DNA of 64,000 nucleotides from the sequence record KJ019146.1. One strand, written 5' to 3'. A model generated the notes under the pieces. That model had not been told where the DNA came from. It did no database searches and worked only from the letters and a program-made list of their open reading frames with translations. The translations under genes and the position numbers were made by a program. Every line of letters starts with the position of its first letter. Position 1 is the stretch's first letter. Below, in pieces: positions 1-48,045 of the stretch.

Positions 1-76
1 GGTCAGGAAGCCCCTTACCAAAACGAGGAAGATGTGGTAGAATGGCACCAACAGCAGTGAGGTTCTTATTGGCTAT

Positions 77-1231
77 TTGATCGGCGGTGCGGGTGAAGGA
101 CCTGATGAGGAGATCATTCAGTCGGATAGTGACTACTCCAAACTATCTGATAAACAACTGATCTACCTACGTGGGCAAACTATTAAAGATATTGCGAAGT
201 ATCATAACTTCCAACAGGTGAGAAAGATTACCCTAAACTCCGCTTATGGTGCCCTAGGTAATCAATACTTTAGATACTATAAACTGGCGAACGCAGAGGC
301 AGTGACCTTCTCTGGTCAGTTAAGTATCCGTTGGATTGAGAATAAGATGAATGGATTCATCAATGAGATTCTAAAAACAGAGGGTAAGGATTATGTGATC
401 GCCTCTGATACTGACTCTATCTACATTAACTTTGGTGATGTGGTAGATAAGTTCTTGAAGAAGTTTGATGGTGATAAGGAGAAGACTGTATCAATGGTAG
501 ATAAGATCTGTAAGGATCAACTAGAACCATTCATTGATAAGTGTTATGCCCATTTGGGTGAGTATGTGAATGCATACGAACAGAAGATGCAGATGAAGAG
601 AGAGAATATTGCTGATCGTGGTATCTGGACAGCGAAGAAGAGATATATCCTGAATGTATGGGATAGTGAGGGTGTTCGTTATGAGGAACCCAAACTGAAG
701 ATGATGGGCATCGAAGCAGTGAAGTCCTCCACACCTGCTCCCTGTAGAACTATGATTAAGGATGCTCTCCGTATTATCATTGAGAAATCTGAGGATGAAG
801 TTATTGACTACATTGATGATTGTAGAAAGAAGTTTAAACAGATGAAACCAGAGGAGATTGCGTTTCCTCGTTCTGTGAGTGATATGATCAAGTTTCGTTC
901 TGGGACAACAATATATGCTAAGAGTACTCCTATGCATGTGAGGGGGGCGTTACTATTCAATCATCACATTAAGAAGGGTGGGTTGGAGAACAAGTATTCT
1001 CTCATCAATAGTGGTGAGAAGATCAAGTTCTGCTACCTCAAGATTCCTAATCTAATTGGTGAGAATGTTATCTCATTCATCTCCGACTTTCCTAGGGAAC
1101 TTAAGTTGGAGAAGTATGTTGATTATGATACCCAATTCAATAAAGCATTCCTAGATCCACTCAAGATCATCTTGGATGCTATTGGTTGGAACTGTGAGAA
1201 ACAGATGTCTTTGGAATCATTTTTCACCTGA
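77..1231 (+). CDS. 43: T4-like family B DNA polymerase, C-terminal part (gp43B-like: fingers/palm/thumb)
   Basis: Motifs KITLNSAYG, ASDTDSIY, AKKRY and MGIEAVKSSTP are present. The frame is closed upstream by TAG at 38-40, so this is not a window-edge truncation. The start (TTG 77 or ATT 68) is uncertain. Confidence 0.9.
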   Translation: MIGGAGEGPDEEIIQSDSDYSKLSDKQLIYLRGQTIKDIAKYHNFQQVRKITLNSAYGALGNQYFRYYKLANAEAVTFSGQLSIRWIENKMNGFINEILKTEGKDYVIASDTDSIYINFGDVVDKFLKKFDGDKEKTVSMVDKICKDQLEPFIDKCYAHLGEYVNAYEQKMQMKRENIADRGIWTAKKRYILNVWDSEGVRYEEPKLKMMGIEAVKSSTPAPCRTMIKDALRIIIEKSEDEVIDYIDDCRKKFKQMKPEEIAFPRSVSDMIKFRSGTTIYAKSTPMHVRGALLFNHHIKKGGLENKYSLINSGEKIKFCYLKIPNLIGENVISFISDFPRELKLEKYVDYDTQFNKAFLDPLKIILDAIGWNCEKQMSLESFFT

Positions 1232-5740: not shown

Positions 5741-5814
5741 GGGTTAATAGCTCAGCTGGACAGAGCAACGCTCTTCTAAAGCGTCGGTCGTTGGTTCGAA
5801 TCCAACTTAACCCG
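5741..5814 (+). tRNA. tRNA-Arg (anticodon TCT), CCA not encoded
   Basis: Acceptor GGGTTAA/TTAACCC, D arm GCTC/GAGC, anticodon arm ACGCT-ctTCTaa-AGCGT, T arm GTTGG-TTCGAAT-CCAAC. Confidence 0.97.
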
Positions 5815-5836
5815 TTGGGGTCTAATTAACCCCATA

Positions 5837-6021
5837 GGATGTGACAGAATGAACCGTTTGGTTAATACCGGTCATTGTATAGTAGGGAAGGCTGTGGTGG
5901 CCGCCAGAAAGACTAGGAGACTAGAGTTCTGAGAACCCATACCAGGGTCCCGAAAGTTCAGAGGTATTACTATTCTTAGTATGACCCCTCTGTTGGAGGT
6001 AAAAAGATAATCCTCCCATCC
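5837..6021 (+). ncRNA. ~185-nt structured RNA between two tRNAs, manA-RNA-motif-like
   Basis: Closing stem GGATG/CATCC; internal stems AATGA/TCATT, CAGAGG/CCTCTG and GGAGG/CCTCC. Size and tRNA adjacency fit the manA motif. Not confirmed by a covariance search. Confidence 0.55.
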
Positions 6022-6027
6022 ACCCAA

Positions 6028-6099
6028 TCCACAATAGCTCAGCGGTAGAGTCGGCGACTGTTAATCGCCTTGTCCCTGGTTCGAATCCAGGTTGTGGAG
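6028..6099 (+). tRNA. tRNA-Asn (anticodon GTT), CCA not encoded
   Basis: Acceptor TCCACAA/TTGTGGA, anticodon arm GGCGA-ctGTTaa-TCGCC, T arm CCTGG-TTCGAAT-CCAGG. Confidence 0.97.
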
Positions 6100-9220: not shown

Positions 9221-10120
9221 ATGAAGGAACGCAGAAAGTATCCAACCGTATTGAGGTATCCAGGCGGTAAGTCTAGGATTATCTACTATTTGTTTAGGGA
9301 AAATATGATCCCTAAGAATGTCAAGGAATACCGTGAGGGTTTCCTAGGTGGGGGTTCTTGTGCTCTTGCGTTCTCTGTGATGTACCCAAACACCCCAGTT
9401 TGGGTCAATGATCTTTACTACAATCTGTATATCTTCTGGACACAACTCCAGAAGAATCCAGATCCACTCATCAATCGTCTCCTAGAACTAAAGGACGAAG
9501 CCTGTGATGCATCAGGTACAGAAGAACTAGAGAAAAAGCATAGAAAACTCTACACAGATATGCGTGATCTCATTAACACCTCTAGTGATCACCTTGATAT
9601 TGCAACCTCCTTCTACATTCTAAACCGATCTAGTTTCGGTGGATTCACTGAACAAAACAAGAATGCCTTCATCCGAGACTCATACAAGAATACTATTTTC
9701 TCTCAGAGTAAAATCCGTAAGTTGGCTAATATCTCTGAGATTATCCAACCCTGGAGAATTACCAATACACACTACAAGGAACTAATGAGAACTCCTGGTG
9801 ATGATGTATTTGTGTTCCTAGACCCTCCATATCTAATCAAGGATATGTTGTATGGTAAGGACAAGGAGATGCACACTGGGTTCTCTCATGAAGAGTTTGT
9901 GAGTGAGTGTAAAGGTTCTACACATGACTGGATGATTACCTACAATGAACATGAGTGGTTGAGATCCCAGTTCGCTGACTATCATATGGAGTCTTTCGAG
10001 TTCCGTTATAGTCTCGCCCACAGGGAAGAGAATGGCAACAAGAAAGAAGAACTCCTCATAATGAACTATGAGATTCCTCGTGATATCCCAAACCCACTAG
10101 AGGTAGTTTTGTATGGATGA
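9221..10120 (+). CDS. dam: DNA adenine methyltransferase (Dam/D12 class)
   Basis: LRYPGGKS, FLGGGS, NDL and FLDPPY motifs. Target sequence unknown. Confidence 0.88.
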   Translation: MKERRKYPTVLRYPGGKSRIIYYLFRENMIPKNVKEYREGFLGGGSCALAFSVMYPNTPVWVNDLYYNLYIFWTQLQKNPDPLINRLLELKDEACDASGTEELEKKHRKLYTDMRDLINTSSDHLDIATSFYILNRSSFGGFTEQNKNAFIRDSYKNTIFSQSKIRKLANISEIIQPWRITNTHYKELMRTPGDDVFVFLDPPYLIKDMLYGKDKEMHTGFSHEEFVSECKGSTHDWMITYNEHEWLRSQFADYHMESFEFRYSLAHREENGNKKEELLIMNYEIPRDIPNPLEVVLYG

Positions 10121-10568
10121 TCTAGAGCTAGAGTATCATCTTTATCTGGATGGAAACCCTATTCAGACACTGAAGGATGACGCTAGTACAATGACTTTAG
10201 CCAAGAAGAGAGTTATCGGTCCTTACATTCGTAGAGCTGAATCTTTTATTAAAATATCAGAACCATTTAGGGAACTACTTCGTCTTGATGATGGTAAGGA
10301 TAAACTTCTAGATGCAATAGGTGTTGTCTGGGCACACTACTTTGAACATAAGATTAACAAGAAGTATATGGTTATCCCTAAGGATGCATCTCTTGATTTT
10401 ATGGAATACTTTGGTACTATGGCACAGAAGGATAAGTTCCCGGATGATAAATATATTAAGAAAGCTCAGCGTATCATTCTCTCTCACGAAAAGAGTATTG
10501 ATGCTTTCATTAAGGCTTTTCATAGTATCCGTTTAGCCAACGACAAATATCTCTCCCTGAAGAAATGA
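10113..10568 (+). CDS. hypothetical protein
   Basis: 151-aa ORF overlapping both neighbours. Confidence 0.7.
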   Translation: MDDLELEYHLYLDGNPIQTLKDDASTMTLAKKRVIGPYIRRAESFIKISEPFRELLRLDDGKDKLLDAIGVVWAHYFEHKINKKYMVIPKDASLDFMEYFGTMAQKDKFPDDKYIKKAQRIILSHEKSIDAFIKAFHSIRLANDKYLSLKK

Positions 10569-12955
10569 TCACACCGAAGTCCCTACTATCATTCCTATCT
10601 GAAGCCGCCGACTCAGAAGCCGCACAAAAGGCTAAGGAAATGGGTTTGACCTCTGCTGGTTATGGTAACTGGAGAGATAAGACAGGTAATGTTGTTGCTA
10701 GAACTGAAGGTGGTCAGTTAGTAATGCTCGAGCCTGGAGATCAATCAGGACAGCAAAGTGGAGCTCCAGAATCTGAAGTAGAACAACCCGAAGCACCACA
10801 AGTCCAAGAACCGGATCCAGCTATGGTTGAGAAAGTAGCTAAGGGTCTTTCTGGTGGTAGATATAATATTGCATCAGCACAGAGGAAGAAAGAGTTACTG
10901 GCTTCTGCTAGACAGATATTAATTAATAAACAGATCCAAGACGCTCAGATGCAGGCTGACGCTGATGCTCAGGCAGCGGCACAAAACCCACCAGAACCCA
11001 CTCCAGAGGAGTTGGAACAACAACAGGCAGATATGGAACTACAGCAACAGAATGCTGTAATGGATACCGAACTGAAGGCACAGAGTGTTGAGAACGGGAA
11101 ACTGGACCTTCAGATGAAGAAGGACCAGATGAAGCAACAGAAGGAGGCAGAGAAAGAAGCCAAGGCTATGGATAAGTTAGCCAAGAAAGCTCAAGCTGAA
11201 CAGGAGGCTCAACAGCAGGCTGAAGTAGAAGCTCAACAACAGGCTGATATGGAAGCCCAACAGCAGGCAGATATGGAGGCACAACAGGCACCACCTACAC
11301 CCAGGAAGAGGAAACCTAAAAAGAAGGTAACTGAGTTTGATGGTAACAGAGTAAATAGAAATGAAGATGAACCAACAGATGAGGAGATGGATGATATCCT
11401 AAAACTAATCAGAAGTGAAGGACCATCTACTGCTGGAGACACTATAACAGCGGCAACTAAGGCAGCAAAAGTTCAGAACGATATTGATAATACAGATTAT
11501 GAGATGGATGATATCGAAAGTGATATTACATCTGGTGATTTTGAGAATGAAATTGATGCACTCTACGAGAAACTGGGAGAACTAACTGATAGGCAGAAGA
11601 AGAATGTAGATAAGAAGTTTGGTCAGGTTCGTAAATCTCTATCTAAGATTAGTGATAAGACTAGTAGGGATAATATGAAACAGGCTTTGGCACTTGCTGC
11701 TACCTATACTGGTCGTGTCAACTCAGGTGCTGGTAAGAACGCTCTCGGTTTAGTTGACTATCAGGTACTAAAGTCTAATACACCCCGTTTAGTTGCTGGT
11801 TATGGTAATGGAACACCCCAAGAAGTTAAGAAGTTCGTAGAATCCACTAGGGTTTACAATGTTTCTGATGAAGAAGTGGATGCATTCTATGAGATGCTCC
11901 CACAAAAACTTAAGAATGGATTTAACAAAGCAGGAACTATTGCTCCATCATATCGTGGTCATTACCTAGGTCAGGATGAAAATGGTGAAGCAATTAGAGG
12001 TACATTGAGTGCCAGTACTTCACAGCGTGGTAAGATTGTTGCTCGTCTTCTACTACAACAGGGACTAAGAGACGCATATACTGGACTACCACTGAATCTA
12101 AATCAAGTAGATCTAGAACATGTTGTTGGTTTCAATAACAATGACTATGGTAAAGCCACACAAGAGGAGTTCAATCAGAGAGAGAATATTGATAACTTTG
12201 TATTGACTGCATCTAATGTCAATCAACTCAAGGCTGATAAGAATATGCAGGACTTTATCACTACAGAAGTTGATAAACTTGACTCATTTACAGAACAGGA
12301 TTTTGATGCTAGAGATGATCTAACGAATAGATCAAACGATATCAATACCTCTGGATCTACATTATCATCACTATTCCTCAATGATGGACAGAAACCTGGT
12401 GGTGATCTGGCTAAGATGATCAGTCCTCAGGCTTCTTATGAGAACTTTGATGCATATGCCGAGCGGGATAGGACAATGACGAAGGATATTAACTCCCAGA
12501 TTAATAAGTTTGCTAAGGGTAAAGGTATCAAACTAGCTGGTGTGAAGAATAGAATGGGATATGAGACTATGAAGAAACTAGGTTTGGGTTCATATATTCC
12601 TAAAGCACCAACCCTAGATGATCAGGGTAGAGTTGTGAAAGAAGGTCGTGGTAATCAATCTAAGTTTGATGATAAGGTCTATGTTGCCTTCCTATCATCA
12701 GTGATGGCTAAGGATGATGCTGGTAGAACCGCGGGTCGTGAAGCCTGGGACAACGCTAGACAGTCAGCCGTTGATGCGATGCAGGTGTCAGGTAATAACG
12801 GAGACGGAAAGAGAGCTATTATCTCCTCACTAATTGAATCTGGATACCTTGATCAGAGATTCTTTGATGATAAGGAGTTTCGTAGAATCCTCAAGGAAGA
12901 GTGTGGTTGGAGTTACAGTCTATACTTGGCAGAACAGAGATTGGGTCTGTTATAA
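10565..12955 (+). CDS. 796-aa protein: internal-head-protein-like N-terminus, Q-rich linker, HNH-type nuclease domain
   Basis: RDAYTG...DLEHVV...NFVLTASNVNQLK forms an HNH pattern. The N-terminal module is shared with ORF 16265. Confidence 0.65.
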   Translation: MITPKSLLSFLSEAADSEAAQKAKEMGLTSAGYGNWRDKTGNVVARTEGGQLVMLEPGDQSGQQSGAPESEVEQPEAPQVQEPDPAMVEKVAKGLSGGRYNIASAQRKKELLASARQILINKQIQDAQMQADADAQAAAQNPPEPTPEELEQQQADMELQQQNAVMDTELKAQSVENGKLDLQMKKDQMKQQKEAEKEAKAMDKLAKKAQAEQEAQQQAEVEAQQQADMEAQQQADMEAQQAPPTPRKRKPKKKVTEFDGNRVNRNEDEPTDEEMDDILKLIRSEGPSTAGDTITAATKAAKVQNDIDNTDYEMDDIESDITSGDFENEIDALYEKLGELTDRQKKNVDKKFGQVRKSLSKISDKTSRDNMKQALALAATYTGRVNSGAGKNALGLVDYQVLKSNTPRLVAGYGNGTPQEVKKFVESTRVYNVSDEEVDAFYEMLPQKLKNGFNKAGTIAPSYRGHYLGQDENGEAIRGTLSASTSQRGKIVARLLLQQGLRDAYTGLPLNLNQVDLEHVVGFNNNDYGKATQEEFNQRENIDNFVLTASNVNQLKADKNMQDFITTEVDKLDSFTEQDFDARDDLTNRSNDINTSGSTLSSLFLNDGQKPGGDLAKMISPQASYENFDAYAERDRTMTKDINSQINKFAKGKGIKLAGVKNRMGYETMKKLGLGSYIPKAPTLDDQGRVVKEGRGNQSKFDDKVYVAFLSSVMAKDDAGRTAGREAWDNARQSAVDAMQVSGNNGDGKRAIISSLIESGYLDQRFFDDKEFRRILKEECGWSYSLYLAEQRLGLL
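11210..11290 (+). repeat. 24-nt degenerate coding repeat (QQQADMEA-like, three copies)
   Basis: QQQAEVEA QQQADMEA QQQADMEA in the translation. Boundaries approximate. Confidence 0.7.
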
Positions 12956-12978
12956 TAACTGTAAGGTTATTATTCTAA

Positions 12979-13722
12979 ATGCAGAGTTTTGATGTTGTTA
13001 TTGGCAACCCCCCATACCAGGATGGTAGTGGGGATAAAGAGAAGGGGTTATCTGGATCAAAGAAGAACCTATACTCTGCCTTTATCACCAAGAGTATTGA
13101 ACTACTAAAACCCAACGGATATCTATCATATATCTGTCCACCTGGATACATCAAAACAACTTCTATTGAGAAACCCTCACCACTATTCAAACTAATCCAA
13201 CAGTATAATCTTATCTCTGTTGACTTCAATTGTAAGAAATACTTTCCAACAGTCTCCCTACCAGTCATCACCCGTTTCCTTCTACAGAACACAAAGGAAT
13301 ATAAGGGAACTGATTTTGGTAGTGAGGTCATTGATATTTCTCTTATGGATTATATACCTATCCATTGTTCCAAAGATACACTGAAACGGTTAGAAGAGGT
13401 AGTATCCAAGAAGAAAACCCTAAACTTTAAGAGAGATGATAGTTTTGGGGTAGTGAATAAGTGTATCAAAGACAAAACTAACTTTGTCGTTATAGCACAA
13501 GTATCACCATCCAAACTAGAAGTTTGTGTGAATGATGTATTGATAAATAAAAAGGGAAACAGGAAACCAGTTCATGTTATGGTATGTGATAATACTAGGC
13601 ATGCGGAACGTATTGGTGATATAATGAGAAGCGAGAATGCCACATTTTTAAATACCACCCTACGATATGGTGATGGAAACGTCTATCCTGGAATCATTAA
13701 CTACCTAAACTATGAAATTTGA
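12979..13722 (+). CDS. N6-adenine methyltransferase-like protein, motif IV plus TRD only
   Basis: Begins MQSFDVVIGNPPY; NLYSAFITKS..LLKPNGYLSYI; no FxGxG motif I. Confidence 0.75.
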   Translation: MQSFDVVIGNPPYQDGSGDKEKGLSGSKKNLYSAFITKSIELLKPNGYLSYICPPGYIKTTSIEKPSPLFKLIQQYNLISVDFNCKKYFPTVSLPVITRFLLQNTKEYKGTDFGSEVIDISLMDYIPIHCSKDTLKRLEEVVSKKKTLNFKRDDSFGVVNKCIKDKTNFVVIAQVSPSKLEVCVNDVLINKKGNRKPVHVMVCDNTRHAERIGDIMRSENATFLNTTLRYGDGNVYPGIINYLNYEI

Positions 13723-14617
13723 TGTTGTTATTGGCAACCCTCCATATCAGAATCCTGATGGTGTAAAGAACAAGAAGATCTGGTTATCTTTCTTTGATCT
13801 TGGTGTCTCCCTCCTAAAGAAGGGTGGCACCATGTGTTATATCACGCCCACCACTCACTTCTGGAGTTTGGGTAGAAAGTGGCAAACTGGTGTGTCTGCT
13901 GATATTCTACTGAAACAGAACAACCTTCGTAGTGTAGATTTCACTACATCCAAACACTTCCCACAGGTTGGTGACTACATCTGCAACTATGTTCTACGCA
14001 AAGAACCTCCCAGTGGTATGGTAGATGTTATTGAGAAAGATGGGACAGAGGTTCTACGCCCACATAATGATGTCTATGATTGTGATGAGGAGAGACAAAA
14101 GGCAAAGTTCTTCTCTGCTATGAGAGAACTACGAGAGAAGTATGGGAAGTATCATATTCCCCACGACACAAGAGATAAGAGTCATTATAGTCAGACACAG
14201 GAGGGTGTGTATCAGCATCCTACTTATATTTCGGCAGCAAAACAGATATGGTATGCTGACAGTCCTACACTAGGAACTGATACATTAAAGATTATTATGA
14301 ATATGTCTTCCTACTTCTGGAATATCAATGATACTCAGAAGTATATGAGGATTGATTCAGGTCCTGGTGTTGGGTTATTGGGAAGAATGTTGGCAATTGA
14401 TAGTGTGAAGGATGGTGAGAAGATAGTTGAGTACCTAACTTCACCACTAGTGAAGTTCTACATTGACTGTATGAAGAGGACATCCCCATGGAACCACGCG
14501 ATGTATCAGTTACCAAAGTGTCACCATATGACAGAGAGTGAGATCCTAGATGAGATGGGTTGGACTAGAGACCAGTTTGAAGAAATGTATCCAGAACGTC
14601 TGGAAACCAAAGTATAG
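13712..14617 (+). CDS. N6-adenine methyltransferase-like protein, motif IV plus TRD only
   Basis: Begins MKFDVVIGNPPY; LLKKGGTMCYITP; no motif I. Confidence 0.75.
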   Translation: MKFDVVIGNPPYQNPDGVKNKKIWLSFFDLGVSLLKKGGTMCYITPTTHFWSLGRKWQTGVSADILLKQNNLRSVDFTTSKHFPQVGDYICNYVLRKEPPSGMVDVIEKDGTEVLRPHNDVYDCDEERQKAKFFSAMRELREKYGKYHIPHDTRDKSHYSQTQEGVYQHPTYISAAKQIWYADSPTLGTDTLKIIMNMSSYFWNINDTQKYMRIDSGPGVGLLGRMLAIDSVKDGEKIVEYLTSPLVKFYIDCMKRTSPWNHAMYQLPKCHHMTESEILDEMGWTRDQFEEMYPERLETKV

Positions 14618-14671: not shown

Positions 14672-15553
14672 ATGGTGAAACCCCTGTTTAAGTGGACTGG
14701 TGGAAAGGGGCGACTATTCCAGAAGTATCAAGATCTAAATTTCTTCCCAGAGGCAGACAGGTTCGACACATTTGTTGACCTGTTTTTTGGTGCTGGGTCA
14801 GTGAGTCTTTGGGTTGCGGAGAAGTATCCAGATAAGAAACTTATTATTAATGATAAGAACACGGAACTTATGGGGTTATATACCCAAATACGTGACAACT
14901 GGGGTGAGTTTAGTGAGCACTATAAGAGAGTGTATAACGTATTCCTAGACACCCCAATAGAGAAAAGAAAGGCACTCTACAACTGCTATAAGAAGAGATA
15001 CGCATGGAACTATAAGTGGTTGTCAGAAGCAGAAATTGCGGCAAACCTCCTGGTTATGATGAAGATTAACTTCAATGGTATTTGGCTAGCTTATAAGATG
15101 TATGGTCGTAGGTATTCTACGGCACCAGGGAAGATTGATTATAAAGAAAGTATCTTTAGTATGGAGAATGTGGAACAGTTCCGTGAAGTCCTACTACGGG
15201 CAACACTCTACAATAGATCCTTTGAGGATGTTCCTATTCCTGATAACTCCTGGGTATTTGCTGATCCACCATACAGAGACACCAGAGATATGTATTCTGA
15301 TACATTCACCGATGAACTTCAGTCTAAACTGGCAAAGTTCATAGTCTCTACAAATGGACTATACTGTGAGTCTAATAAAGAAACTGGTGATGGTTTCTGG
15401 GGAGAACACTTCCCCATGGAGAACATCCACTTCACAGATCACAAATACACTTGTGGTTATGGGGGTTCCATTAACCCAGTCACTGAAGTTCTTATAAAGA
15501 ACTATGGGAATAATATCCCACAACCAACTACCCTTGATTCCTTTTTTAACTGA
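14672..15553 (+). CDS. second Dam/D12-class DNA adenine methyltransferase
   Basis: FKWTGGKGRL, DLFFGAGS, INDKN and FADPPY motifs. Confidence 0.85.
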   Translation: MVKPLFKWTGGKGRLFQKYQDLNFFPEADRFDTFVDLFFGAGSVSLWVAEKYPDKKLIINDKNTELMGLYTQIRDNWGEFSEHYKRVYNVFLDTPIEKRKALYNCYKKRYAWNYKWLSEAEIAANLLVMMKINFNGIWLAYKMYGRRYSTAPGKIDYKESIFSMENVEQFREVLLRATLYNRSFEDVPIPDNSWVFADPPYRDTRDMYSDTFTDELQSKLAKFIVSTNGLYCESNKETGDGFWGEHFPMENIHFTDHKYTCGYGGSINPVTEVLIKNYGNNIPQPTTLDSFFN

Positions 15554-15555
15554 TT

Positions 15556-16248
15556 ATGCAAAAGAAAAACCGTATCTCCCACGAAGAAGAAATCAAACTA
15601 TGTCGTCAGGCACAACTACAAGATCATACATCCAAGTATGCTATGACTAAAATGGTTAGTGCTAATATTGGGTTGGTTGAGAAACTCGCTAACAAACTCT
15701 ACATCAAGAATGATCAATACTCTTTCGATGATCTATACCAGGAGGGTGTATTTGGTCTTATCAGAGGTGTGAATAAGTTTGATCCTAGTGTTGGGTGTAG
15801 GTTCTCCACATATTCATACTACTGGATCTATAGTTATATCATGAGGTATTGTGAGAATAACCTAGGCAAGATCCGTATTCCAACTCACCTCCGTGAGAAG
15901 ATGAGGAAACAGAAAGATAATAAAACAGAGTTGGATAAACTAAAATCAAAGGTTCCTTCAGTAGTATCATTGAATACAATAGTGGGTGAATCACTACCCT
16001 TGGATAATGTAGTTACATACACCGAGAATATCTCATTTGATGATGAGATGGAACATGTTTTGGTTGTTATGAATGAGGTTTTGGATGAAAGAGAACACCA
16101 GGTTCTCTGTAGTAGGTTTGGTATTGGTGGTGAGAAACCTCTATCACAAAGAGAGTGTGCTAAACTACACAATGTTACCCATGGTGCTATCTATTTGATC
16201 GAGAAGAGATCCATCAAGAAAATCAAACACCATATGGGGTATAAATAA
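15556..16248 (+). CDS. sigma70-family (RpoD/RpoS-like) sigma factor
   Basis: Region 1.2 SHEEEIKL; region 2 ANIGLV...DDLYQEGVFGLIRGVNKFDP...RFSTYSYYWI; region 4 HTH LDERE...RFG...SQRE. Confidence 0.88.
   Translation: MQKKNRISHEEEIKLCRQAQLQDHTSKYAMTKMVSANIGLVEKLANKLYIKNDQYSFDDLYQEGVFGLIRGVNKFDPSVGCRFSTYSYYWIYSYIMRYCENNLGKIRIPTHLREKMRKQKDNKTELDKLKSKVPSVVSLNTIVGESLPLDNVVTYTENISFDDEMEHVLVVMNEVLDEREHQVLCSRFGIGGEKPLSQRECAKLHNVTHGAIYLIEKRSIKKIKHHMGYK
16240..16247 (+). promoter_or_regulatory. T4-type late promoter
   Basis: TATAAATA, 17 nt upstream of ORF 16265. Confidence 0.7.
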
Positions 16249-16264
16249 TACTATAGTAGATTCT

Positions 16265-17482
16265 ATGACGATGAGATCGTTTCTAACATTCCTAACCGAA
16301 GCTCGTTCTCGTGCATCCAAGAGAGCCAAAGAGTTGGGACTCACTGGCAACGGTCATGGTGGATGGGAAGATAGCGAAGGTAACCTAGTCGCTATGACTG
16401 TGAAGGGTGATCTGGAGTTTGTGAAGGGAAGAGAACCCAAAGAGGAAGAAGAACCCACTGAAAAGACTTCTGCCCCTGAAGAGGAACCAACATCCAAATC
16501 ACCAGCACCTGGATTGGATCCAGAGGAAACCGATACACCAGAACAGGAAGAACCAGCTCCTGTTCCCAAAGATAAGGGTATTCTAACTGTTGCTTTTGGT
16601 AGGTTTAACCCCCCTACTATTGGGCATGAGAAACTAATCAATACTGTAGCGGGATATGCTGATGATAATGATTACATTATTATCCCCTCTAGGAGTGAAG
16701 ATAAGAAGAAGAATCCTCTAGATGTTGATACGAAAGTCTCTATCATGAGGCAGATGTATCCACAACACGCCGAGAAGATTGTTAACGATCCACACAACAG
16801 AACTATCTTTGATGTGATGCGTAAGGCACATAACGATGGTTACGCTGGTATTCGTATTGTTGGTGGTGGTGATAGAGTAAAAGAATATGAGAAACTAGCT
16901 AACGCATATAATGGATCTACCTATGACTTTGAGGAGATCGATGTAGTCAATGCTGGTGATAGGGATCCAGATTCCGAAGGTGCAGAGGGTATGTCTGCCT
17001 CTAAGATGAGAAAGGCGGCAGCTGATAACGACTTTGATTCTTTCAGAAAGGGAATGCCAAAGACCCTCAGTAACGACCAGATGGTTTCAATCTACACTCA
17101 GGTTCAGAAGTCTATGGGTGTATCTCCTAAGAAAGTTGCTGCTGAGGGGTGGGAAGTTGCCCCTAGACTGTATCCACAGGAACTGAGAGAGGCTTATATC
17201 CAAAACGAAATCTATAATATTGGTGATACTGTCAGCCATGACACCACTGGTATGGTAGGTAAGATTGTAAGAAAGGGAACTAATCACCTCATTTGTGTAA
17301 CAGAAAGTGAGGAAATGTTCAAGACCTGGACACAGGATGTTAGTCCTGCGGATCTAAAACCACAACCAGCAATCTCTACTCCAAAGGAGAGGGAAGTTGG
17401 AACAGATTCCCTTAGATCTTTCCTTCAAAGGATCACTCCAGGAGAGAAAGAGCAATCCTTTATAAATAAACATAAGAAATAA
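16265..17482 (+). CDS. cytidylyltransferase/NMNAT-like HxGH nucleotidyltransferase with N-terminal extension
   Basis: FGRFNPPTIGHEKL, VGGGDRV and MSASKMR motifs. Confidence 0.85.
   Translation: MTMRSFLTFLTEARSRASKRAKELGLTGNGHGGWEDSEGNLVAMTVKGDLEFVKGREPKEEEEPTEKTSAPEEEPTSKSPAPGLDPEETDTPEQEEPAPVPKDKGILTVAFGRFNPPTIGHEKLINTVAGYADDNDYIIIPSRSEDKKKNPLDVDTKVSIMRQMYPQHAEKIVNDPHNRTIFDVMRKAHNDGYAGIRIVGGGDRVKEYEKLANAYNGSTYDFEEIDVVNAGDRDPDSEGAEGMSASKMRKAAADNDFDSFRKGMPKTLSNDQMVSIYTQVQKSMGVSPKKVAAEGWEVAPRLYPQELREAYIQNEIYNIGDTVSHDTTGMVGKIVRKGTNHLICVTESEEMFKTWTQDVSPADLKPQPAISTPKEREVGTDSLRSFLQRITPGEKEQSFINKHKK
17461..17468 (+). promoter_or_regulatory. T4-type late promoter
   Basis: TATAAATA upstream of ORF 17502. 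Confidence 0.7.
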
Positions 17483-17501: not shown

Positions 17502-19262
17502 ATGGATTTCAACGTAACCGAAGCTGTCGAGCTAATCGTATTGTTAGCCGAGACAGAACAGCTAACACTACAAGATGCTCTACAGGAGTTCCTATCAGAG
17601 ACCGAGTTGGACTCTGAAACGGCATCCCATCTAAAGGGTGCCCTCTTTGAGAAATATTCACTCAGAGAGATGGCGACTGACGCCGTAACAAACGCTATGA
17701 TGAAAGTGTTTGTTAGTCGTCCAGTAGTAGAGGAGGAAGTGGAAACTCCTGATGGTAATCTCTATTTTGTAGAGGTTGAACTAGAGGAGGAAGTTCTAGA
17801 AGGTTATCTAACCCTAGAAGAAATCCAGAATATGAGAGTGGATGCTGACGTTCTATCCGTCAAGTTAGTTGATGAAGGTGTTCGTGACACTGACGCCAAG
17901 AAAGGAACAGAGGAAAGAAAGAAACGCCTTGAGAAGAAGCGTGGAATGAAGTTGGATGATCATCCTCAGTATCTGGAAACAGATATGAAGAAGCGTCAGG
18001 AGAATAACGAGAATGCTCGTAAGGATATGGATAAAGTGAAGGGTCAGAAGAATCCTCACTTCGAAGAGTATGATATTTCTGAAGGTCGCAAAGAAGGTGA
18101 GTCTTCTAAAGATTACGCCGATAGAATGACTAAGAAGTATTCTGGTGGTAAGTCTAAGTCCTATGATCCCATGAAGGATAAGAACTTCGACCATGACAAG
18201 GCAGAAAGAACCCGTGGTTCTATGGAAGAAGGTGTTATGAAGGGAAGTGGTTCCTTCAAGAGAGGCGGACAAGCTCATCAAGGTAAAGGGGCTGCTCAAG
18301 CTTCTGTTGGTGGTATGTCTAATAGCAAAGTTTATGGACTTGGTGCTTCTAAACCAAAGGGTAGTGACAAAAAGAGATCCGACAAACAGAAAGCTCAAGC
18401 TTTGGCTGATCGTAAAGCAGCTGCAAAGGATAGGATGAAGGATGGAACATCTAATTCTAAACTTGACAAATTGATCAAAAAAGTTCAGAGTGAGGGTCTA
18501 GATCCAGTAGGTGGCGAAGACGCTGACATTAATAACGATAATAAGGTTGATAAGACTGATAAGTATCTACACAATCGTCGTAAGGCTATCGGCAAGGCGA
18601 TGAAGAAGGAGTCAGCTTGGGCTGAGTATCTAAATCGTAGAGGAATCTCTGAGGAAGTATTCTCTGAAGGTGACCTAATCGACGCAGGTCGTAAGAATGA
18701 GGGAGAACGAAAGGGAAAAAAGATTACCGGGGAGGGTGTTGATAACTCCTCCTCTGTGAAGTTGATGCCCCGTATCGCTGAAGCCGCTATCATCACTGAG
18801 AAGTCAGAGAGTAAGTCACAACAGCGTCTCTTTGGTATGGTAAGAGCAGCTCAGAAGGGTGAGAAACCCGCCTCTGGTAAGGTTGCTGAACTAGCTTCTA
18901 AGGTTGGTAAGAAAGACGTTCTAGACTTCGCTAAGACAAAACACAAGGGTTTGAAAGAGCAGTGTTGCCCTGATTGTGGAACTCCTGATTGTTCCTGTGA
19001 TGAGAAGCCCAAGGCTAAGAAAAAGAAAGCTAAACTAGATGAAGCAGGGATGCCTATTCTAGAGTATTCTAGAAACAACGCTGAAGGTCCTACACCTGAA
19101 ATGATTGATCCTCCAAAGGATGAAGAAGGTAAGAAGGGTGTAAAGAACCCTAAAGGTAAGGCTAAGAGACCTGGTGCAGGTGACAGAAGACCTAACGATG
19201 GTGGTTCTGAACTACCATTCGATATGGGAACTGTACCTGGTGGCGGCGGCTGTGGTTGCTAA
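17502..19262 (+). CDS. highly charged low-complexity protein, probable virion internal protein
   Basis: 586 aa, K/E/D/G-rich, follows a late promoter; EF-hand-like DINNDNKVDKTD. Confidence 0.55.
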   Translation: MDFNVTEAVELIVLLAETEQLTLQDALQEFLSETELDSETASHLKGALFEKYSLREMATDAVTNAMMKVFVSRPVVEEEVETPDGNLYFVEVELEEEVLEGYLTLEEIQNMRVDADVLSVKLVDEGVRDTDAKKGTEERKKRLEKKRGMKLDDHPQYLETDMKKRQENNENARKDMDKVKGQKNPHFEEYDISEGRKEGESSKDYADRMTKKYSGGKSKSYDPMKDKNFDHDKAERTRGSMEEGVMKGSGSFKRGGQAHQGKGAAQASVGGMSNSKVYGLGASKPKGSDKKRSDKQKAQALADRKAAAKDRMKDGTSNSKLDKLIKKVQSEGLDPVGGEDADINNDNKVDKTDKYLHNRRKAIGKAMKKESAWAEYLNRRGISEEVFSEGDLIDAGRKNEGERKGKKITGEGVDNSSSVKLMPRIAEAAIITEKSESKSQQRLFGMVRAAQKGEKPASGKVAELASKVGKKDVLDFAKTKHKGLKEQCCPDCGTPDCSCDEKPKAKKKKAKLDEAGMPILEYSRNNAEGPTPEMIDPPKDEEGKKGVKNPKGKAKRPGAGDRRPNDGGSELPFDMGTVPGGGGCGC

Positions 19263-47907: not shown

Positions 47908-47934
47908 AGAAATGTAACGTTCTTATTACAACAC

Positions 47935-48045
47935 TTCCATCTAACCGAGACCTATGGGGAAGTAAAATACGTCTCTAATACCTACACCGGAGGGTGGTGT
48001 AGGAATAATACTATCGTCAGCTCCCCCTGGCACTACTTACCCTTT
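47935..48045 (+). ncRNA. structured psbA leader, PhotoRC-II-motif-like
   Basis: Stems GAGAC/GTCTC and CCTACACC/GGTGTAGG. The GGAGGGT loop is complementary to downstream ACCCT. Position matches the known motif; not confirmed by search. Confidence 0.55.

What the first reader, a model, noticed from the sequence alone, without database searches (positions are those of the whole stretch)
10565..12955. Candidate virion-delivered nuclease: T4 internal-protein-like leader plus Cas9-type HNH domain, beside a methyltransferase battery
Seen in sequence: the protein starts MITPKSLLSFLSE|AA, then a ~40-aa module shared with ORF 16265, a long Q/E/A linker and an acidic stretch. At ~12046-12240 it reads LLLQQGLRDAYTGLPLNLNQVDLEHVV...ENIDNFVLTASNVNQLKADK. 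This lines up by eye with the Cys-less Cas9 HNH (SpCas9, recalled from memory: [30 protein letters not shown]...[20 protein letters not shown]). No RuvC motifs or CRISPR array are visible. Established: T4 internal proteins use an N-terminal capsid-targeting peptide (e.g. MKTYQEFIAE) removed by gp21 after Glu, and are injected with the DNA. Inference: a nuclease packaged in the head and co-injected could attack host or rival-phage DNA at once, while the four neighbouring MTase genes mark self. That would be an injected R-M-like system.
Basis: partly seen in the sequence, partly recalled or inferred. Interest (0 to 1): 0.85.

Follow-up and report, generated by a model that had tools for sequence, protein, structure and literature searches.

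The report
Capsid-packaged HNH nuclease of a cyanophage
A marine cyanophage encodes a large protein that joins a Cas9-like DNA-cutting (HNH) domain to a short N-terminal tag also found on enzymes detected inside related phage particles, so it is probably carried in the phage head and delivered into the host cell with the DNA.

Summary
The window is Synechococcus phage ACG-2014f, a T4-like cyanomyovirus. ORF 10565-12955 (796 aa) is real and reads as described.

**HNH domain.** Single-sequence Pfam and PDB searches found nothing. A profile of 57 relatives hits Cas9 HNH domains (best E 1.5e-8). 32 of 57 relatives match Pfam HNH_4. A pLDDT-94 model finds Cas9 HNH structures first. The (E/D)H..N..N catalytic set is kept in about 120 of 123 family domains. 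There is no RuvC domain, guide RNA or CRISPR array.

**N-terminal leader.** The leader plus ~40-aa module is shared with the neighbouring cytidylyltransferase (E 4e-15) and with that gene in 388 cyanophage records.

**Virion evidence.** In phage S-CREM2, published virion mass spectrometry detected an HNH relative (gp12), a kinase, a SAM hydrolase, a small basic protein and the cytidylyltransferase. Exactly these five of 219 genes carry the leader. Other relatives are annotated as virion proteins.

**Variable locus.** ACG-2014f isolates carry at least five divergent HNH alleles behind one constant leader. The neighbouring methyltransferase cassettes differ with them.

**Untested.** Packaging of this protein, cleavage after E13, nuclease activity and any methylation-dependent self/non-self logic remain inference. 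I read it as a new variant of T4-style internal head proteins.

The parts
10565..12955 (+). Whole gene: 796-aa leader-linker-HNH protein (Syn7803C16_184, phrog_3561)
   Evidence: ORF list. 100% identical to KJ019146.1 and KJ019151.1. phrog_3561 E 2e-294. 225 family representatives among 1.84 billion proteins.
10565..10603 (+). 13-aa N-terminal leader MITPKSLLSFLSE, ending L-S-E followed by A: candidate capsid-targeting propeptide and prohead-protease site
   Evidence: It fits the T4 gp21 L/I-X-E motif and the Glu-Ala bond (PMC9026906). The same [SA]F[LM]xE leader occurs on 5 of 219 S-CREM2 proteins, all found by virion MS. In the window the pattern occurs only in ORFs 10565 and 16265, and more weakly in 17502.
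10604..10729 (+). ~40-aa module AxKAKEMGLTSAGYGNWRDKTGNVVARTEGGQLV, shared with other cargo enzymes
   Evidence: E 4e-15 to ORF 16265. tblastn finds it in 388 cyanophage records, mostly at the N-terminus of the cytidylyltransferase gene. Also present in S-CREM2 gp12 and twice in kinase gp14.
10730..11554 (+). Acidic low-complexity linker (Q/E/A-rich 120-245, acidic 262-330, net charge -27), including the 24-nt tandem repeat at 11207-11287
   Evidence: Composition. Tandem Repeats Finder. Poorly conserved and of variable length in homologues.
11555..12004 (+). Basic helical domain before the HNH, with the invariant motif GRVNSGAGKN (G388, K391) and LP445-446
   Evidence: Alignment A1. AlphaFold model m01eb543c125e, pLDDT 80.6.
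12005..12259 (+). HNH (beta-beta-alpha-metal) nuclease core; catalytic E518-H519 (12116-12121), N544 (12194-12196), N553 (12221-12223)
   Evidence: Profile A3 against PDB: Cas9 HNH E 1.5e-8. Pfam HNH_4 in 32 of 57 relatives; window alone E 0.09. Model pLDDT 94.1. The top nine Foldseek hits are Cas9 HNH. H 122/123, N544 123/123, N553 118/123, E/D518 122/123.
12260..12952 (+). C-terminal helical domain of unknown function, conserved within the family
   Evidence: Model. Whole-domain structural matches to S-CRM01 g51, S-CBWM1 gp174 and the S-TIM5 virion protein. No PDB match.
10113..10568 (+). 151-aa ORF (phrog_3417) overlapping the HNH start by 4 nt (ATGA); contains GATAAATA at 10446-10453
   Evidence: No family or structure match. 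Not homologous to S-CREM2 gp13.
9221..10120 (+). Dam-type (D12 class) N6-adenine methyltransferase, constant in all isolates examined
   Evidence: PF02086 E 1.2e-24. Present in loci L006, L007, L009 and L010.
12979..13722 (+). Eco57I-like methyltransferase-like ORF 1, starting at motif IV (NPPY); part of the variable cassette
   Evidence: PF07669 E 7e-17, profile positions 73-171 only. PADLOC MTase_II hits from mid-model. Present only with alleles A and C.
13712..14617 (+). Eco57I-like methyltransferase-like ORF 2 (phrog_3689); variable cassette
   Evidence: PF07669 E 2.6e-12. phrog_3689 E 8e-133. Present with alleles A, C and D.
14672..15553 (+). Second Dam-type (D12) methyltransferase, constant
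   Evidence: PF02086 E 9e-21.
16240..17482 (+). Late-promoter motif TATAAATA (16240-16247) and cytidylyltransferase/NMNAT-like gene (16265-17482) with the same leader and module: a sister cargo protein
   Evidence: Orthologues detected in S-CREM2 and S-SZBM1 virions by MS (PMC10665884; PMC9146016).

Best explanation
ORF 10565-12955 encodes an ~88-kDa internal head ('cargo') protein of a T4-like cyanophage. I propose the following mechanism. The 13-residue N-terminal leader, helped by the ~40-aa module behind it, directs the protein into the assembling prohead core. The gp21-type prohead protease then cuts after L-S-E13. The mature protein stays in the head beside the DNA and is ejected into the next host cell. 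There its Cas9-like HNH domain, which keeps a complete (E/D)H..N..N metal-ion site, cuts DNA. It has no RuvC domain and no guide RNA, so it would act as a protein-guided nuclease or nickase. The most likely targets are host or competing-phage DNA. The phage's own methyltransferases may spare its own genome. Status of each step: homology, fold, the shared leader and the virion detection of relatives are shown. Leader function is strongly suggested. Cleavage, ejection, nuclease activity, target and methylation dependence are all inferred.
For: HNH domain: a 57-member family profile hits Cas9 HNH domains in PDB, best E 1.5e-8. HNH_4, HNH or HNH_5 Pfam hits occur in 32, 8 and 5 of 57 relatives. 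The AlphaFold core model has pLDDT 94.1, and its top nine Foldseek hits are Cas9 HNH domains, prob 0.97-1.00, E 0.014-0.15. The catalytic residues are near-invariant in 123 domains.

Leader: it is shared with ORF 16265 at E 4e-15 and with cytidylyltransferase genes in 388 cyanophage records. It ends in the L-X-E|A form that T4 gp21 cuts.

Virion presence of relatives: S-CREM2 virion MS found gp12 'Cas9-like nuclease' (28 peptides), kinase gp14, SAM hydrolase gp6, gp13 and cytidylyltransferase gp154. gp12 shares both leader/module (E 8e-8) and HNH (E 2e-5) with the window protein. gp12 is a full-length homologue of ACG-2014f alleles B and E (E 1e-67 and 1.6e-73). The motif [SA]F[LIMFV]xE within the first 30 aa occurs in exactly these 5 of 219 S-CREM2 genes and in 0 of 167 non-virion genes. 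S-CBWM1 gp174 and S-TIM5 AEZ65730 share the whole C-terminal fold and are deposited as virion proteins. S-SZBM1 virions contain the cytidylyltransferase as their only enzyme.

Late expression: exact TATAAATA motifs precede ORF 16265 in the window, and precede the S-CREM2 gp15-gp12 operon, gp6 and gp154.

Arms-race signature: five divergent HNH alleles sit behind one constant leader in isolates of one phage, with methyltransferase cassettes that differ.
Against: There is no proteomic, cleavage or activity data for this protein or this phage. The window protein alone falls below the Pfam HNH_4 threshold (13.2 bits against 22), and the Foldseek E-values are modest (0.014). The S-CREM2 authors themselves warn that abundant late proteins might co-purify with virions. 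S-SCSM2R virion MS (23 proteins) did not report its NMNAT/cytidylyltransferase. I defined the leader motif after seeing several of the sequences, so the Fisher p (6.5e-4) is optimistic. The minimal T4 motif [LI]xE alone is not enriched (p 0.16). No exact late promoter lies directly upstream of ORF 10565, only GATAAATA 119 nt upstream. The gene lies in the replication module, not the head module.
Confidence: 0.55

Rival explanations
1. Injected R-M-like weapon. The packaged HNH cuts any DNA that lacks the methylation pattern written by the adjacent methyltransferases. HNH alleles and methyltransferase cassettes would then co-evolve as specificity pairs used against host DNA and rival phages.
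For: Methyltransferases of four different classes lie next to family members in independent lineages: Eco57I-like and D12 in the window; two N6_N4 plus D12 in L011; C5 DNA_methylase in L012 and S-TIM5; Dam plus an EcoRI-like gene and a virion SAM hydrolase in S-CREM2. Within ACG-2014f the HNH body and the methyltransferase cassette vary together among five alleles.
Against: Allele E has no extra methyltransferase, and allele B has only a 169-aa unknown ORF. S-CRM01 g51, L008 and S-CBWM1 gp174 have no methyltransferase neighbour. The two Eco57I-like ORFs lack the AdoMet-binding half seen in gamma-class models. Alleles A and C differ but share the same Eco57I-like pair. No specificity data exist.
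Confidence: 0.22
2. Packaged nuclease for host takeover only. The ejected HNH nicks or degrades host DNA, or blocks host replication, without reference to methylation. The methyltransferases serve separately as protection against host restriction systems.
For: Same packaging evidence as the main explanation. Family members occur without methyltransferase neighbours. Phage methyltransferases are commonly anti-restriction (general knowledge).
Against: The phage genome would need another way to avoid self-cleavage inside the head and after ejection. The allele diversity suggests selection on specificity.
Confidence: 0.2
3. Intracellular DNA-metabolism or packaging helper (for example a terminase-assisting HNH like HK97 gp74, or a recombination/repair nuclease). 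On this reading it appears in virion proteomes only through co-purification or incidental trapping.
For: The gene sits in the replication/recombination module. In S-CRM01 and L008 it lies beside gp47/gp46. In L014 it lies near a terminase gene. The S-CREM2 authors raise a contamination caveat.
Against: In S-CREM2 it yields 28 unique peptides, comparable with bona fide structural proteins. The leader is restricted to virion-detected proteins. Relatives are annotated as virion proteins in three phage genera. At 796 aa with a long acidic linker, it is unlike the ~100-aa terminase-associated HNH proteins.
Confidence: 0.1
4. Selfish homing endonuclease cassette whose mobility explains the allele diversity.
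For: HNH homing endonucleases are common in T4-like phages. Small HNH/NUMOD genes lie nearby in some loci.
Against: It has no NUMOD, IENR or other homing-type DNA-binding modules. It holds a constant genomic position with a constant N-terminal third. It is large and has been found in virions.
Confidence: 0.04

Closest known systems
T4 internal head proteins and Alt (capsid-targeting-sequence cargo processed by gp21)
   Same: A short N-terminal propeptide ends in L/I-X-E followed by Ala. Diverse unrelated cargo sits behind one leader. The host is a T4-like phage with a gp21-type protease. Late-promoter motifs precede sister cargo genes. Small basic proteins with the same leader exist (S-CREM2 gp13 and the L011 77-aa ORF).
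   Different: I did not test for or find sequence homology to T4 IPs. An additional ~40-aa module and a ~275-aa acidic linker follow the leader. The cargo is a large nuclease rather than a small basic protein or an ADP-ribosyltransferase. Processing and ejection have not been shown.
S-CREM2 gp12 'CRISPR-associated endonuclease Cas9/Csn1 (virion protein)' (PMC10665884)
   Same: Same architecture of leader, module, linker and HNH. Detected in virions by MS. It is a full-length homologue of alleles B and E at the same ACG-2014f locus.
   Different: The HNH body is only ~20-28% identical to the window allele. That paper named it from an HHpred hit (92% probability, E 0.2), proposed acquisition from hosts, and says nothing about an N-terminal signal.
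Cas9 / IscB HNH domain (Pfam HNH_4)
   Same: Cys-less beta-beta-alpha-metal fold. The (D/E)H..N..N motif and the preceding LxQxGxDxYTG helix are the same. The H-to-N spacing in the short family members equals that of SpCas9.
   Different: No RuvC domain, REC or PAM-interacting lobes, guide RNA or CRISPR array. The window allele has an 11-residue insert between beta1 and beta2.
Phage P1 Dar system (DarB methyltransferase/helicase packaged in heads)
   Same: Large DNA-acting enzymes are packaged in the capsid and injected to act at the very start of infection (my own knowledge). The PHROG hit list for ORF 12979 includes a DarB-like family through the shared NPPY motif.
   Different: Dar proteins protect phage DNA from restriction. 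Here the cargo is a nuclease. There is no homology of the HNH protein to Dar proteins.
Engineered T4 CTS-nuclease fusions (CTS-staphylococcal nuclease, IPIII-EcoRI)
   Same: They show that a leader-tagged nuclease can be packaged in a T4-type head and delivered on infection (PMC9026906).
   Different: Those fusions are laboratory constructs. This would be a natural counterpart.

Membership tests
HNH (beta-beta-alpha-metal) nucleases, HNH_4 / Cas9-type | Beta-beta-alpha-metal fold | tested here: met
   In the AlphaFold core model (pLDDT 94.1), strand 95-99 ends in E-H and strand 125-129 is followed by helix 130-136. The top Foldseek hits are Cas9 HNH domains, prob 0.97-1.00.
HNH (beta-beta-alpha-metal) nucleases, HNH_4 / Cas9-type | Catalytic His preceded by D/E, plus two Asn | tested here: met
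   E518-H519, N544 and N553. Across 123 family domains: H 122, N544 123, N553 118, E/D518 122.
HNH (beta-beta-alpha-metal) nucleases, HNH_4 / Cas9-type | Significant profile match to the curated family | tested here: inconclusive
   The window domain alone scores 13.2 bits (E 0.09), below the 22-bit cut-off. However, 32 of 57 relatives hit HNH_4 (best 1.1e-6), and the family profile hits Cas9 HNH in PDB at 1.5e-8.
HNH (beta-beta-alpha-metal) nucleases, HNH_4 / Cas9-type | Metal-dependent DNA cleavage | not testable with these tools
   Needs a biochemical assay.
Cas9 / IscB RNA-guided nucleases | Split RuvC domain flanking the HNH | tested here: not met
   No RuvC or Cas9 Pfam hit. The flanking regions are helical with no RNase-H-like fold match.
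Cas9 / IscB RNA-guided nucleases | Associated guide RNA (CRISPR array, tracrRNA or omega RNA) | tested here: not met
   Rfam finds only manA, PhotoRC-II and two tRNAs, all elsewhere in the window. The only tandem array near the gene is the coding repeat.
T4-type capsid-targeted internal head proteins | N-terminal propeptide ending in L/I-X-E, cleaved before a small residue | tested here: met
   L11-S12-E13|A14. Motif definition taken from PMC9026906. This shows the sequence pattern only.
T4-type capsid-targeted internal head proteins | Physical presence in purified virions | not testable with these tools
   No data for ACG-2014f. Relatives: S-CREM2 gp12 by MS; S-CBWM1 gp174 and S-TIM5 AEZ65730 deposited as virion proteins.
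T4-type capsid-targeted internal head proteins | Leader shared by otherwise unrelated packaged proteins and absent from non-packaged ones | tested here: met
   In S-CREM2 the motif occurs in 5 of 52 virion proteins against 0 of 167 non-virion proteins (motif defined post hoc). In the window it occurs only in ORFs 10565 and 16265, and weakly in 17502.
T4-type capsid-targeted internal head proteins | Processing by the prohead protease and ejection with the DNA | not testable with these tools
   Needs N-terminal mapping and ejection assays.
T4-type capsid-targeted internal head proteins | Late transcription | tested here: inconclusive
   Exact TATAAATA motifs precede ORF 16265 and the S-CREM2 cargo operons. 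Before ORF 10565 there is only GATAAATA at 10446.
Restriction-modification system | Nuclease gene linked to a methyltransferase gene | tested here: met
   Four methyltransferase-like ORFs lie within 2.5 kb. Linkage recurs in L011, L012, S-TIM5 and S-CREM2 but not in S-CRM01, L008 or S-CBWM1.
Restriction-modification system | Nuclease and methyltransferase recognise the same sequence, and methylation blocks cleavage | not testable with these tools
   Needs methylome and cleavage assays.
HNH homing endonucleases | Small enzyme with NUMOD/IENR-type DNA-binding modules, inserted in or beside its target gene | tested here: not met
   No such domains. The protein is 796 aa, at a constant locus with a conserved N-terminal third.

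The most novel reading that the evidence does not exclude
T4-like cyanophages carry a modular 'cargo system'. One short leader (with an optional ~40-aa module) loads a changeable set of enzymes into the head: HNH nuclease, NMNAT-like nucleotidyltransferase, protein kinase, SAM hydrolase and small basic proteins. Within it, the HNH nuclease and its neighbouring methyltransferase cassette would form a natural, injected, restriction-modification-like weapon. Its specificity alleles (at least five in one phage species) would be swapped by recombination in wild populations, to attack host or rival-phage DNA at the moment of entry.
Probability: 0.22. Interest if true: 0.85.

Novelty: new variant of a known kind. 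Interest (0 to 1): 0.62.

Why it matters
Capsid-packaged effector proteins are well studied in coliphage T4 and in P1. In the abundant marine cyanophages they appear only as unexplained entries in virion proteome tables.

This work links those entries (nuclease, kinase, SAM hydrolase, NMNAT-like enzyme) through one shared N-terminal leader. That gives a simple sequence rule for predicting head cargo in cyanophage genomes and metagenomes.

It also identifies what would be a natural packaged nuclease. Until now this was achieved only by engineering T4.

The five-allele polymorphism behind a constant leader marks the locus as a hot spot of phage-host or phage-phage conflict in wild populations. 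The existing isolate collection makes it directly testable.

The leader could also serve as a tool for loading foreign proteins into cyanophage heads.

Tried and rejected
- **Single-sequence searches found nothing.** Pfam, NCBIfam, PADLOC and PDB searches of the whole protein or its C-terminal half gave no hits.
- **Full-length and C-terminal profiles also failed.** Against PDB they returned only low-complexity noise. Only a profile trimmed to the ~160-aa core worked.
- **The 467-residue model gave weak Foldseek results.** Cas9 HNH came first, but at non-significant E values of about 1. The trimmed model improved this.
- **Cas9/IscB membership is rejected.** There is no RuvC domain, no guide RNA and no array.
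- **Homing endonuclease and terminase-helper readings are unlikely**, as set out under the rival explanations.
- **The upstream 151-aa ORF is not a homologue of S-CREM2 gp13**. Neither it nor the 433-aa ORF 7884 has any family or structure match.
- **The original virion-proteome papers could not be read.** Those for S-CRM01, S-TIM5 and S-CBWM1 are not held. For these phages I therefore rely on the deposited annotations and on statements in PMC10665884.
- **The Sullivan 2010 proteomics table did not help.** As held, it does not list the cytidylyltransferase.
- **A shared Cys-rich tag in S-CBWM1 was not found.** I looked for it on kinase gp173 to match gp174, and it is absent.
- **The minimal T4 motif [LI]xE alone is not enriched** among S-CREM2 virion proteins (p 0.16).


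Full report
**Identity of the window and the gene.** The region is 100% identical to Synechococcus phage ACG-2014f isolates Syn7803C16 (KJ019146.1) and KJ019151.1. This is a T4-like cyanomyovirus (Kyanoviridae, Atlauavirus). ORF 10565-12955 (+) is intact, encodes 796 aa and is deposited as a hypothetical protein. It lies in the replication module between gp41/MazG and gp61/NrdA. The local gene order is: 433-aa unknown, Dam, 151-aa unknown, this ORF, two Eco57I-like ORFs, second Dam, sigma-70-like factor, cytidylyltransferase, 'gp186'. It belongs to phrog_3561, function unknown.

**Check of the observation.**
- The protein begins MITPKSLLSFLSEAA.
- The first ~55 residues and the following spacer align with ORF 16265 at E 4e-15.
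- Residues 120-245 are 56% Q/E/A, partly encoded by a 24-nt tandem repeat. Residues 262-330 carry net charge -15. The only cysteine is C780.
- The quoted HNH-like stretch is residues 494-558.

**Is it an HNH?** Single-sequence searches failed. Profiles of the full protein or the whole C-terminal half failed as well.

I collected 18 homologues and then searched 1.84 billion representatives with a C-terminal profile. That gave 225 hits at E <= 1e-3. A ~160-residue core (window residues 421-585) is the common denominator.
- In a 57-sequence alignment of this core, H519 and N544 are invariant, and E518, N553, Q499, D503, Y505, T506 and G507 are at least 90% conserved.
- Across 123 domain instances the counts are H 122, N544 123, N553 118 and E/D518 122.
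- Scanning the 57 core sequences against Pfam gave HNH_4 in 32 (best 1.1e-6), HNH in 8 and HNH_5 in 5. The window sequence itself reaches only 13.2 bits, E 0.09.
- The core profile searched against all PDB sequences returned Cas9 HNH domains almost exclusively. The best was 6o56_A at E 1.5e-8, with about 55 further Cas9 entries down to 1e-4.
- An AlphaFold model of the core built with this alignment is very confident (pLDDT 94.1, pTM 0.87). It shows the strand-strand-helix arrangement with E-H at the end of strand 1 and N544 and N553 in strand 2 and the helix.
- The first nine Foldseek hits for that model are Cas9 HNH domains from Neisseria, Actinomyces and Geobacillus (prob 0.97-1.00, E 0.014-0.15). 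Other Cas9s and the Gme HNH nickase follow.

The 'Cas9-type, Cys-less HNH' reading is therefore supported at the family level. It is not a Cas9 or IscB. There is no RuvC or other Cas9 domain. There is no CRISPR array or known guide RNA.

**The N-terminal leader.** tblastn with the first 57 residues finds 388 cyanophage records. The match is nearly always at the N-terminus of the conserved 'cytidylyltransferase' (NMNAT-like) gene. ACG-2014f has two copies, ORFs 10565 and 16265. Within the HNH family the ~40-aa module can be absent while a short amphipathic leader ending in hydrophobic-x-Glu is kept, for example MDPLEELYQLFE|AE in the S-CRM01 type. The T4 literature defines capsid-targeting sequences as 10-19-residue propeptides removed by gp21 after L/I-X-E. 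The first cleavage of this kind to be defined was a Glu-Ala bond (PMC9026906). L11-S12-E13|A14 fits this pattern.

**Published virion data on relatives.** The S-CREM2 paper (PMC10665884) reports 52 virion proteins by mass spectrometry. Among them are six 'non-structural' ones: SAM hydrolase gp6, kinase gp14, cytidylyltransferase gp154, 'CRISPR-Cas9 nuclease' gp12 (28 unique peptides) and two endolysins. The small gp13 was detected as well.
- gp12 has the same architecture as the window protein: leader/module E 8e-8, HNH E 2e-5.
- gp14 begins VKRFDAFLTEE followed by the module, which it carries twice. gp6 begins MKDFDSFLEE. gp13 begins MKDLHSFLTE. gp154 begins MKNFSSFLTE.
- I translated the N-termini of all 219 annotated S-CREM2 genes. 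The motif [SA]F[LIMFV]xE within the first 30 residues occurs in exactly these five proteins and in none of the 167 proteins not found in virions (Fisher p 6.5e-4).
- A looser motif gives 7 of 52 against 3 of 167 (p 0.002) and adds virion protein gp136.
- I chose the motif after seeing several of these sequences, so the p-values are optimistic. The absence of the motif from the non-virion set is still informative. The bare T4 motif [LI]xE is not enriched (p 0.16).
- That paper says nothing about an N-terminal signal. It named gp12 from an HHpred hit to Actinomyces Cas9.

Further support comes from other phages. S-SZBM1 virions contain the cytidylyltransferase as the only enzyme (PMC9146016). 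S-CBWM1 gp174 and S-TIM5 AEZ65730 share the whole C-terminal fold with the window protein (BFVD E 9e-10 and 2e-9) and are deposited as virion proteins. Against this, S-SCSM2R virion MS (23 proteins) did not list its NMNAT homologue. The S-CREM2 authors also note that co-purification of abundant proteins is possible.

**Expression signals.** All eight exact TATAAATA motifs in the window are on the + strand, 20-60 nt upstream of ORF starts. One precedes ORF 16265 and one precedes ORF 17502. In S-CREM2 exact copies precede the gp15-gp14-gp13-gp12 operon, gp6 and gp154. Upstream of ORF 10565 there is only GATAAATA, at 10446 inside the overlapping 151-aa ORF. This is weak evidence.

**A hypervariable locus.** Only 2 of 45 ACG-2014f records hold the whole gene. 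The others share just the first ~625 nt at 88-90% identity. Fetching the locus from other isolates shows at least five alleles between the same flanking genes:
- A: 796 aa, 2 records, followed by two Eco57I-like ORFs.
- B: 961 aa, 11 records, followed by a 169-aa unknown ORF.
- C: 953 aa, 5 records, followed by an N6_N4 methyltransferase, both Eco57I-like ORFs and a small HNH.
- D: 892 aa, about 19 records, followed by Eco57I-like ORF 2 only.
- E: 980 aa, with no extra gene.

All alleles keep the leader, the module and the start of the linker. All match the HNH core model (E 1e-7 to 1e-10), but their bodies are only 20-40% identical. Alleles B and E are full-length homologues of S-CREM2 gp12. 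Close relatives of allele A (70-93% identity) occur in several metagenomes.

**Genomic contexts elsewhere.**
- In S-CRM01 and metagenomic contig L008 the gene lies between gp55 and gp47/gp46, with no methyltransferase.
- In L011 the order is: kinase-like protein with the module; a 77-aa leader protein homologous to S-CREM2 gp13 (E 3e-20); HNH; two N6_N4 methyltransferases; a second phrog_3561 paralogue; Dam; a leader-bearing cytidylyltransferase.
- In S-TIM5 and L012 a C5 or other DNA methylase is adjacent on the opposite strand.
- In S-CBWM1 the gene lies next to the major capsid protein gene.
- In an unrelated terminase-bearing contig (L014), the HNH protein and the upstream 182-aa protein share a different, Cys-rich N-terminal tag (E 1e-9). 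That upstream protein has weak HxGH similarity to the cytidylyltransferase. The tag occurs in 15 of 100 family representatives, including S-CBWM1 gp174.

Methyltransferase linkage is thus recurrent, and it involves four methyltransferase classes. It is not universal.

**Interpretation.** The best-supported reading is that this is a head-internal cargo protein of the T4 type whose payload is an active-looking HNH nuclease. It would be loaded via the leader, probably trimmed after E13, and delivered with the genome. Homology, fold, the shared leader and the virion detection of relatives are shown. Leader function is strongly suggested. Cleavage, ejection, activity, target and any dependence on methylation are inferred.

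The covariation of alleles with methyltransferase cassettes and the repeated linkage speak for it. Against it are methyltransferase-free contexts, allele E, the sharing of one cassette by alleles A and C, and the truncated look of the two Eco57I-like ORFs.

**Novelty.** The kind is known: capsid-targeted, ejected phage proteins. A relative has already been listed as a Cas9-like virion protein. Three things are not described in the papers I could read:
- a common leader that ties together the enzymatic cargo of cyanophage heads;
- the family-wide definition of the HNH core;
- the five-allele polymorphism with varying methyltransferase cassettes.

I rate it a new variant of a known kind, with interest 0.62.

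Noticed in passing
window 17502-19262 (+): 586-aa 'gp186' homologue (phrog_3326). It has an exact TATAAATA at 17461 and an internal EFLSE|TE at residues 29-33. It is rich in K/E/D low-complexity sequence and ends in GGGGCGC. It looks like another candidate head-internal protein.
   Followed up: partly
window 12979-13722 and 13712-14617 (+): Both Eco57I-like ORFs begin directly at catalytic motif IV (DVVIGNPPYQ) and align to gamma-class methyltransferase models only from mid-model on. They lack the usual N-terminal AdoMet-binding half, so whether they are active, permuted or partnered enzymes is unclear.
   Followed up: partly
ACG-2014f loci L006, L007, L009, L010 versus window 10565-14617: At least five divergent HNH alleles (796-980 aa) sit behind an identical leader/linker in isolates of one phage species. 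Each has a different methyltransferase cassette. The flanking genes are constant.
   Followed up: yes
L016 (S-CREM2) gp6, gp12, gp13, gp14; L015 gp154; L018 gp136: The leader motif [SA]F[LM]xE marks exactly the five non-structural, non-lysin proteins detected in S-CREM2 virions. gp136 (MQTFSMFFSE), a virion protein of unknown function, may be a sixth.
   Followed up: yes
L014 4448-6387: In an unrelated contig with a Terminase_6N gene, the HNH family member P0088 and the upstream 182-aa protein share a Cys-rich N-terminal tag (CxxGWQCGDSCIS, E 1e-9). The upstream protein is weakly HxGH/nucleotidyltransferase-like. The tag occurs in 15 of 100 family representatives, including S-CBWM1 gp174. It may be a second, lineage-specific targeting tag.
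   Followed up: partly
L011 2042-2275 and L005 7311-7547: Small (77-78 aa) basic proteins with the leader MKDL(N/H)xFLxE are translationally coupled upstream of the HNH gene in two phages (E 3e-20 to each other). One was detected in virions. They resemble T4 internal proteins in size and charge. The window has an unrelated 151-aa ORF in this position.
   Followed up: partly
window 5741-6099 and 47921-48016: Rfam finds a manA RNA motif (5816-6026) between two tRNA genes (5741-5814 and 6028-6099), and a PhotoRC-II motif at 47921-48016 just upstream of ORF 48053.
   Followed up: no
window 16240, 17461, 19675, 45404, 54413, 55178, 56397, 58526: All eight exact TATAAATA motifs are on the + strand. 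At least five (16240, 17461, 19675, 45404, 56397) lie 17-34 nt upstream of an ATG ORF start, and 58526 lies 55 nt upstream of one. They are likely T4-type late promoters.
   Followed up: partly
L001 1-2667 (window 1-1231 region): The gp43 DNA polymerase is annotated as two separate CDS with two small ORFs between them, so the polymerase gene appears split.
   Followed up: no
window 15556-16248 (+): A sigma-70-like factor (regions 2 and 4) lies between the second Dam gene and the leader-bearing cytidylyltransferase. S-CREM2 also encodes a sigma-70-like factor (gp65).
   Followed up: no
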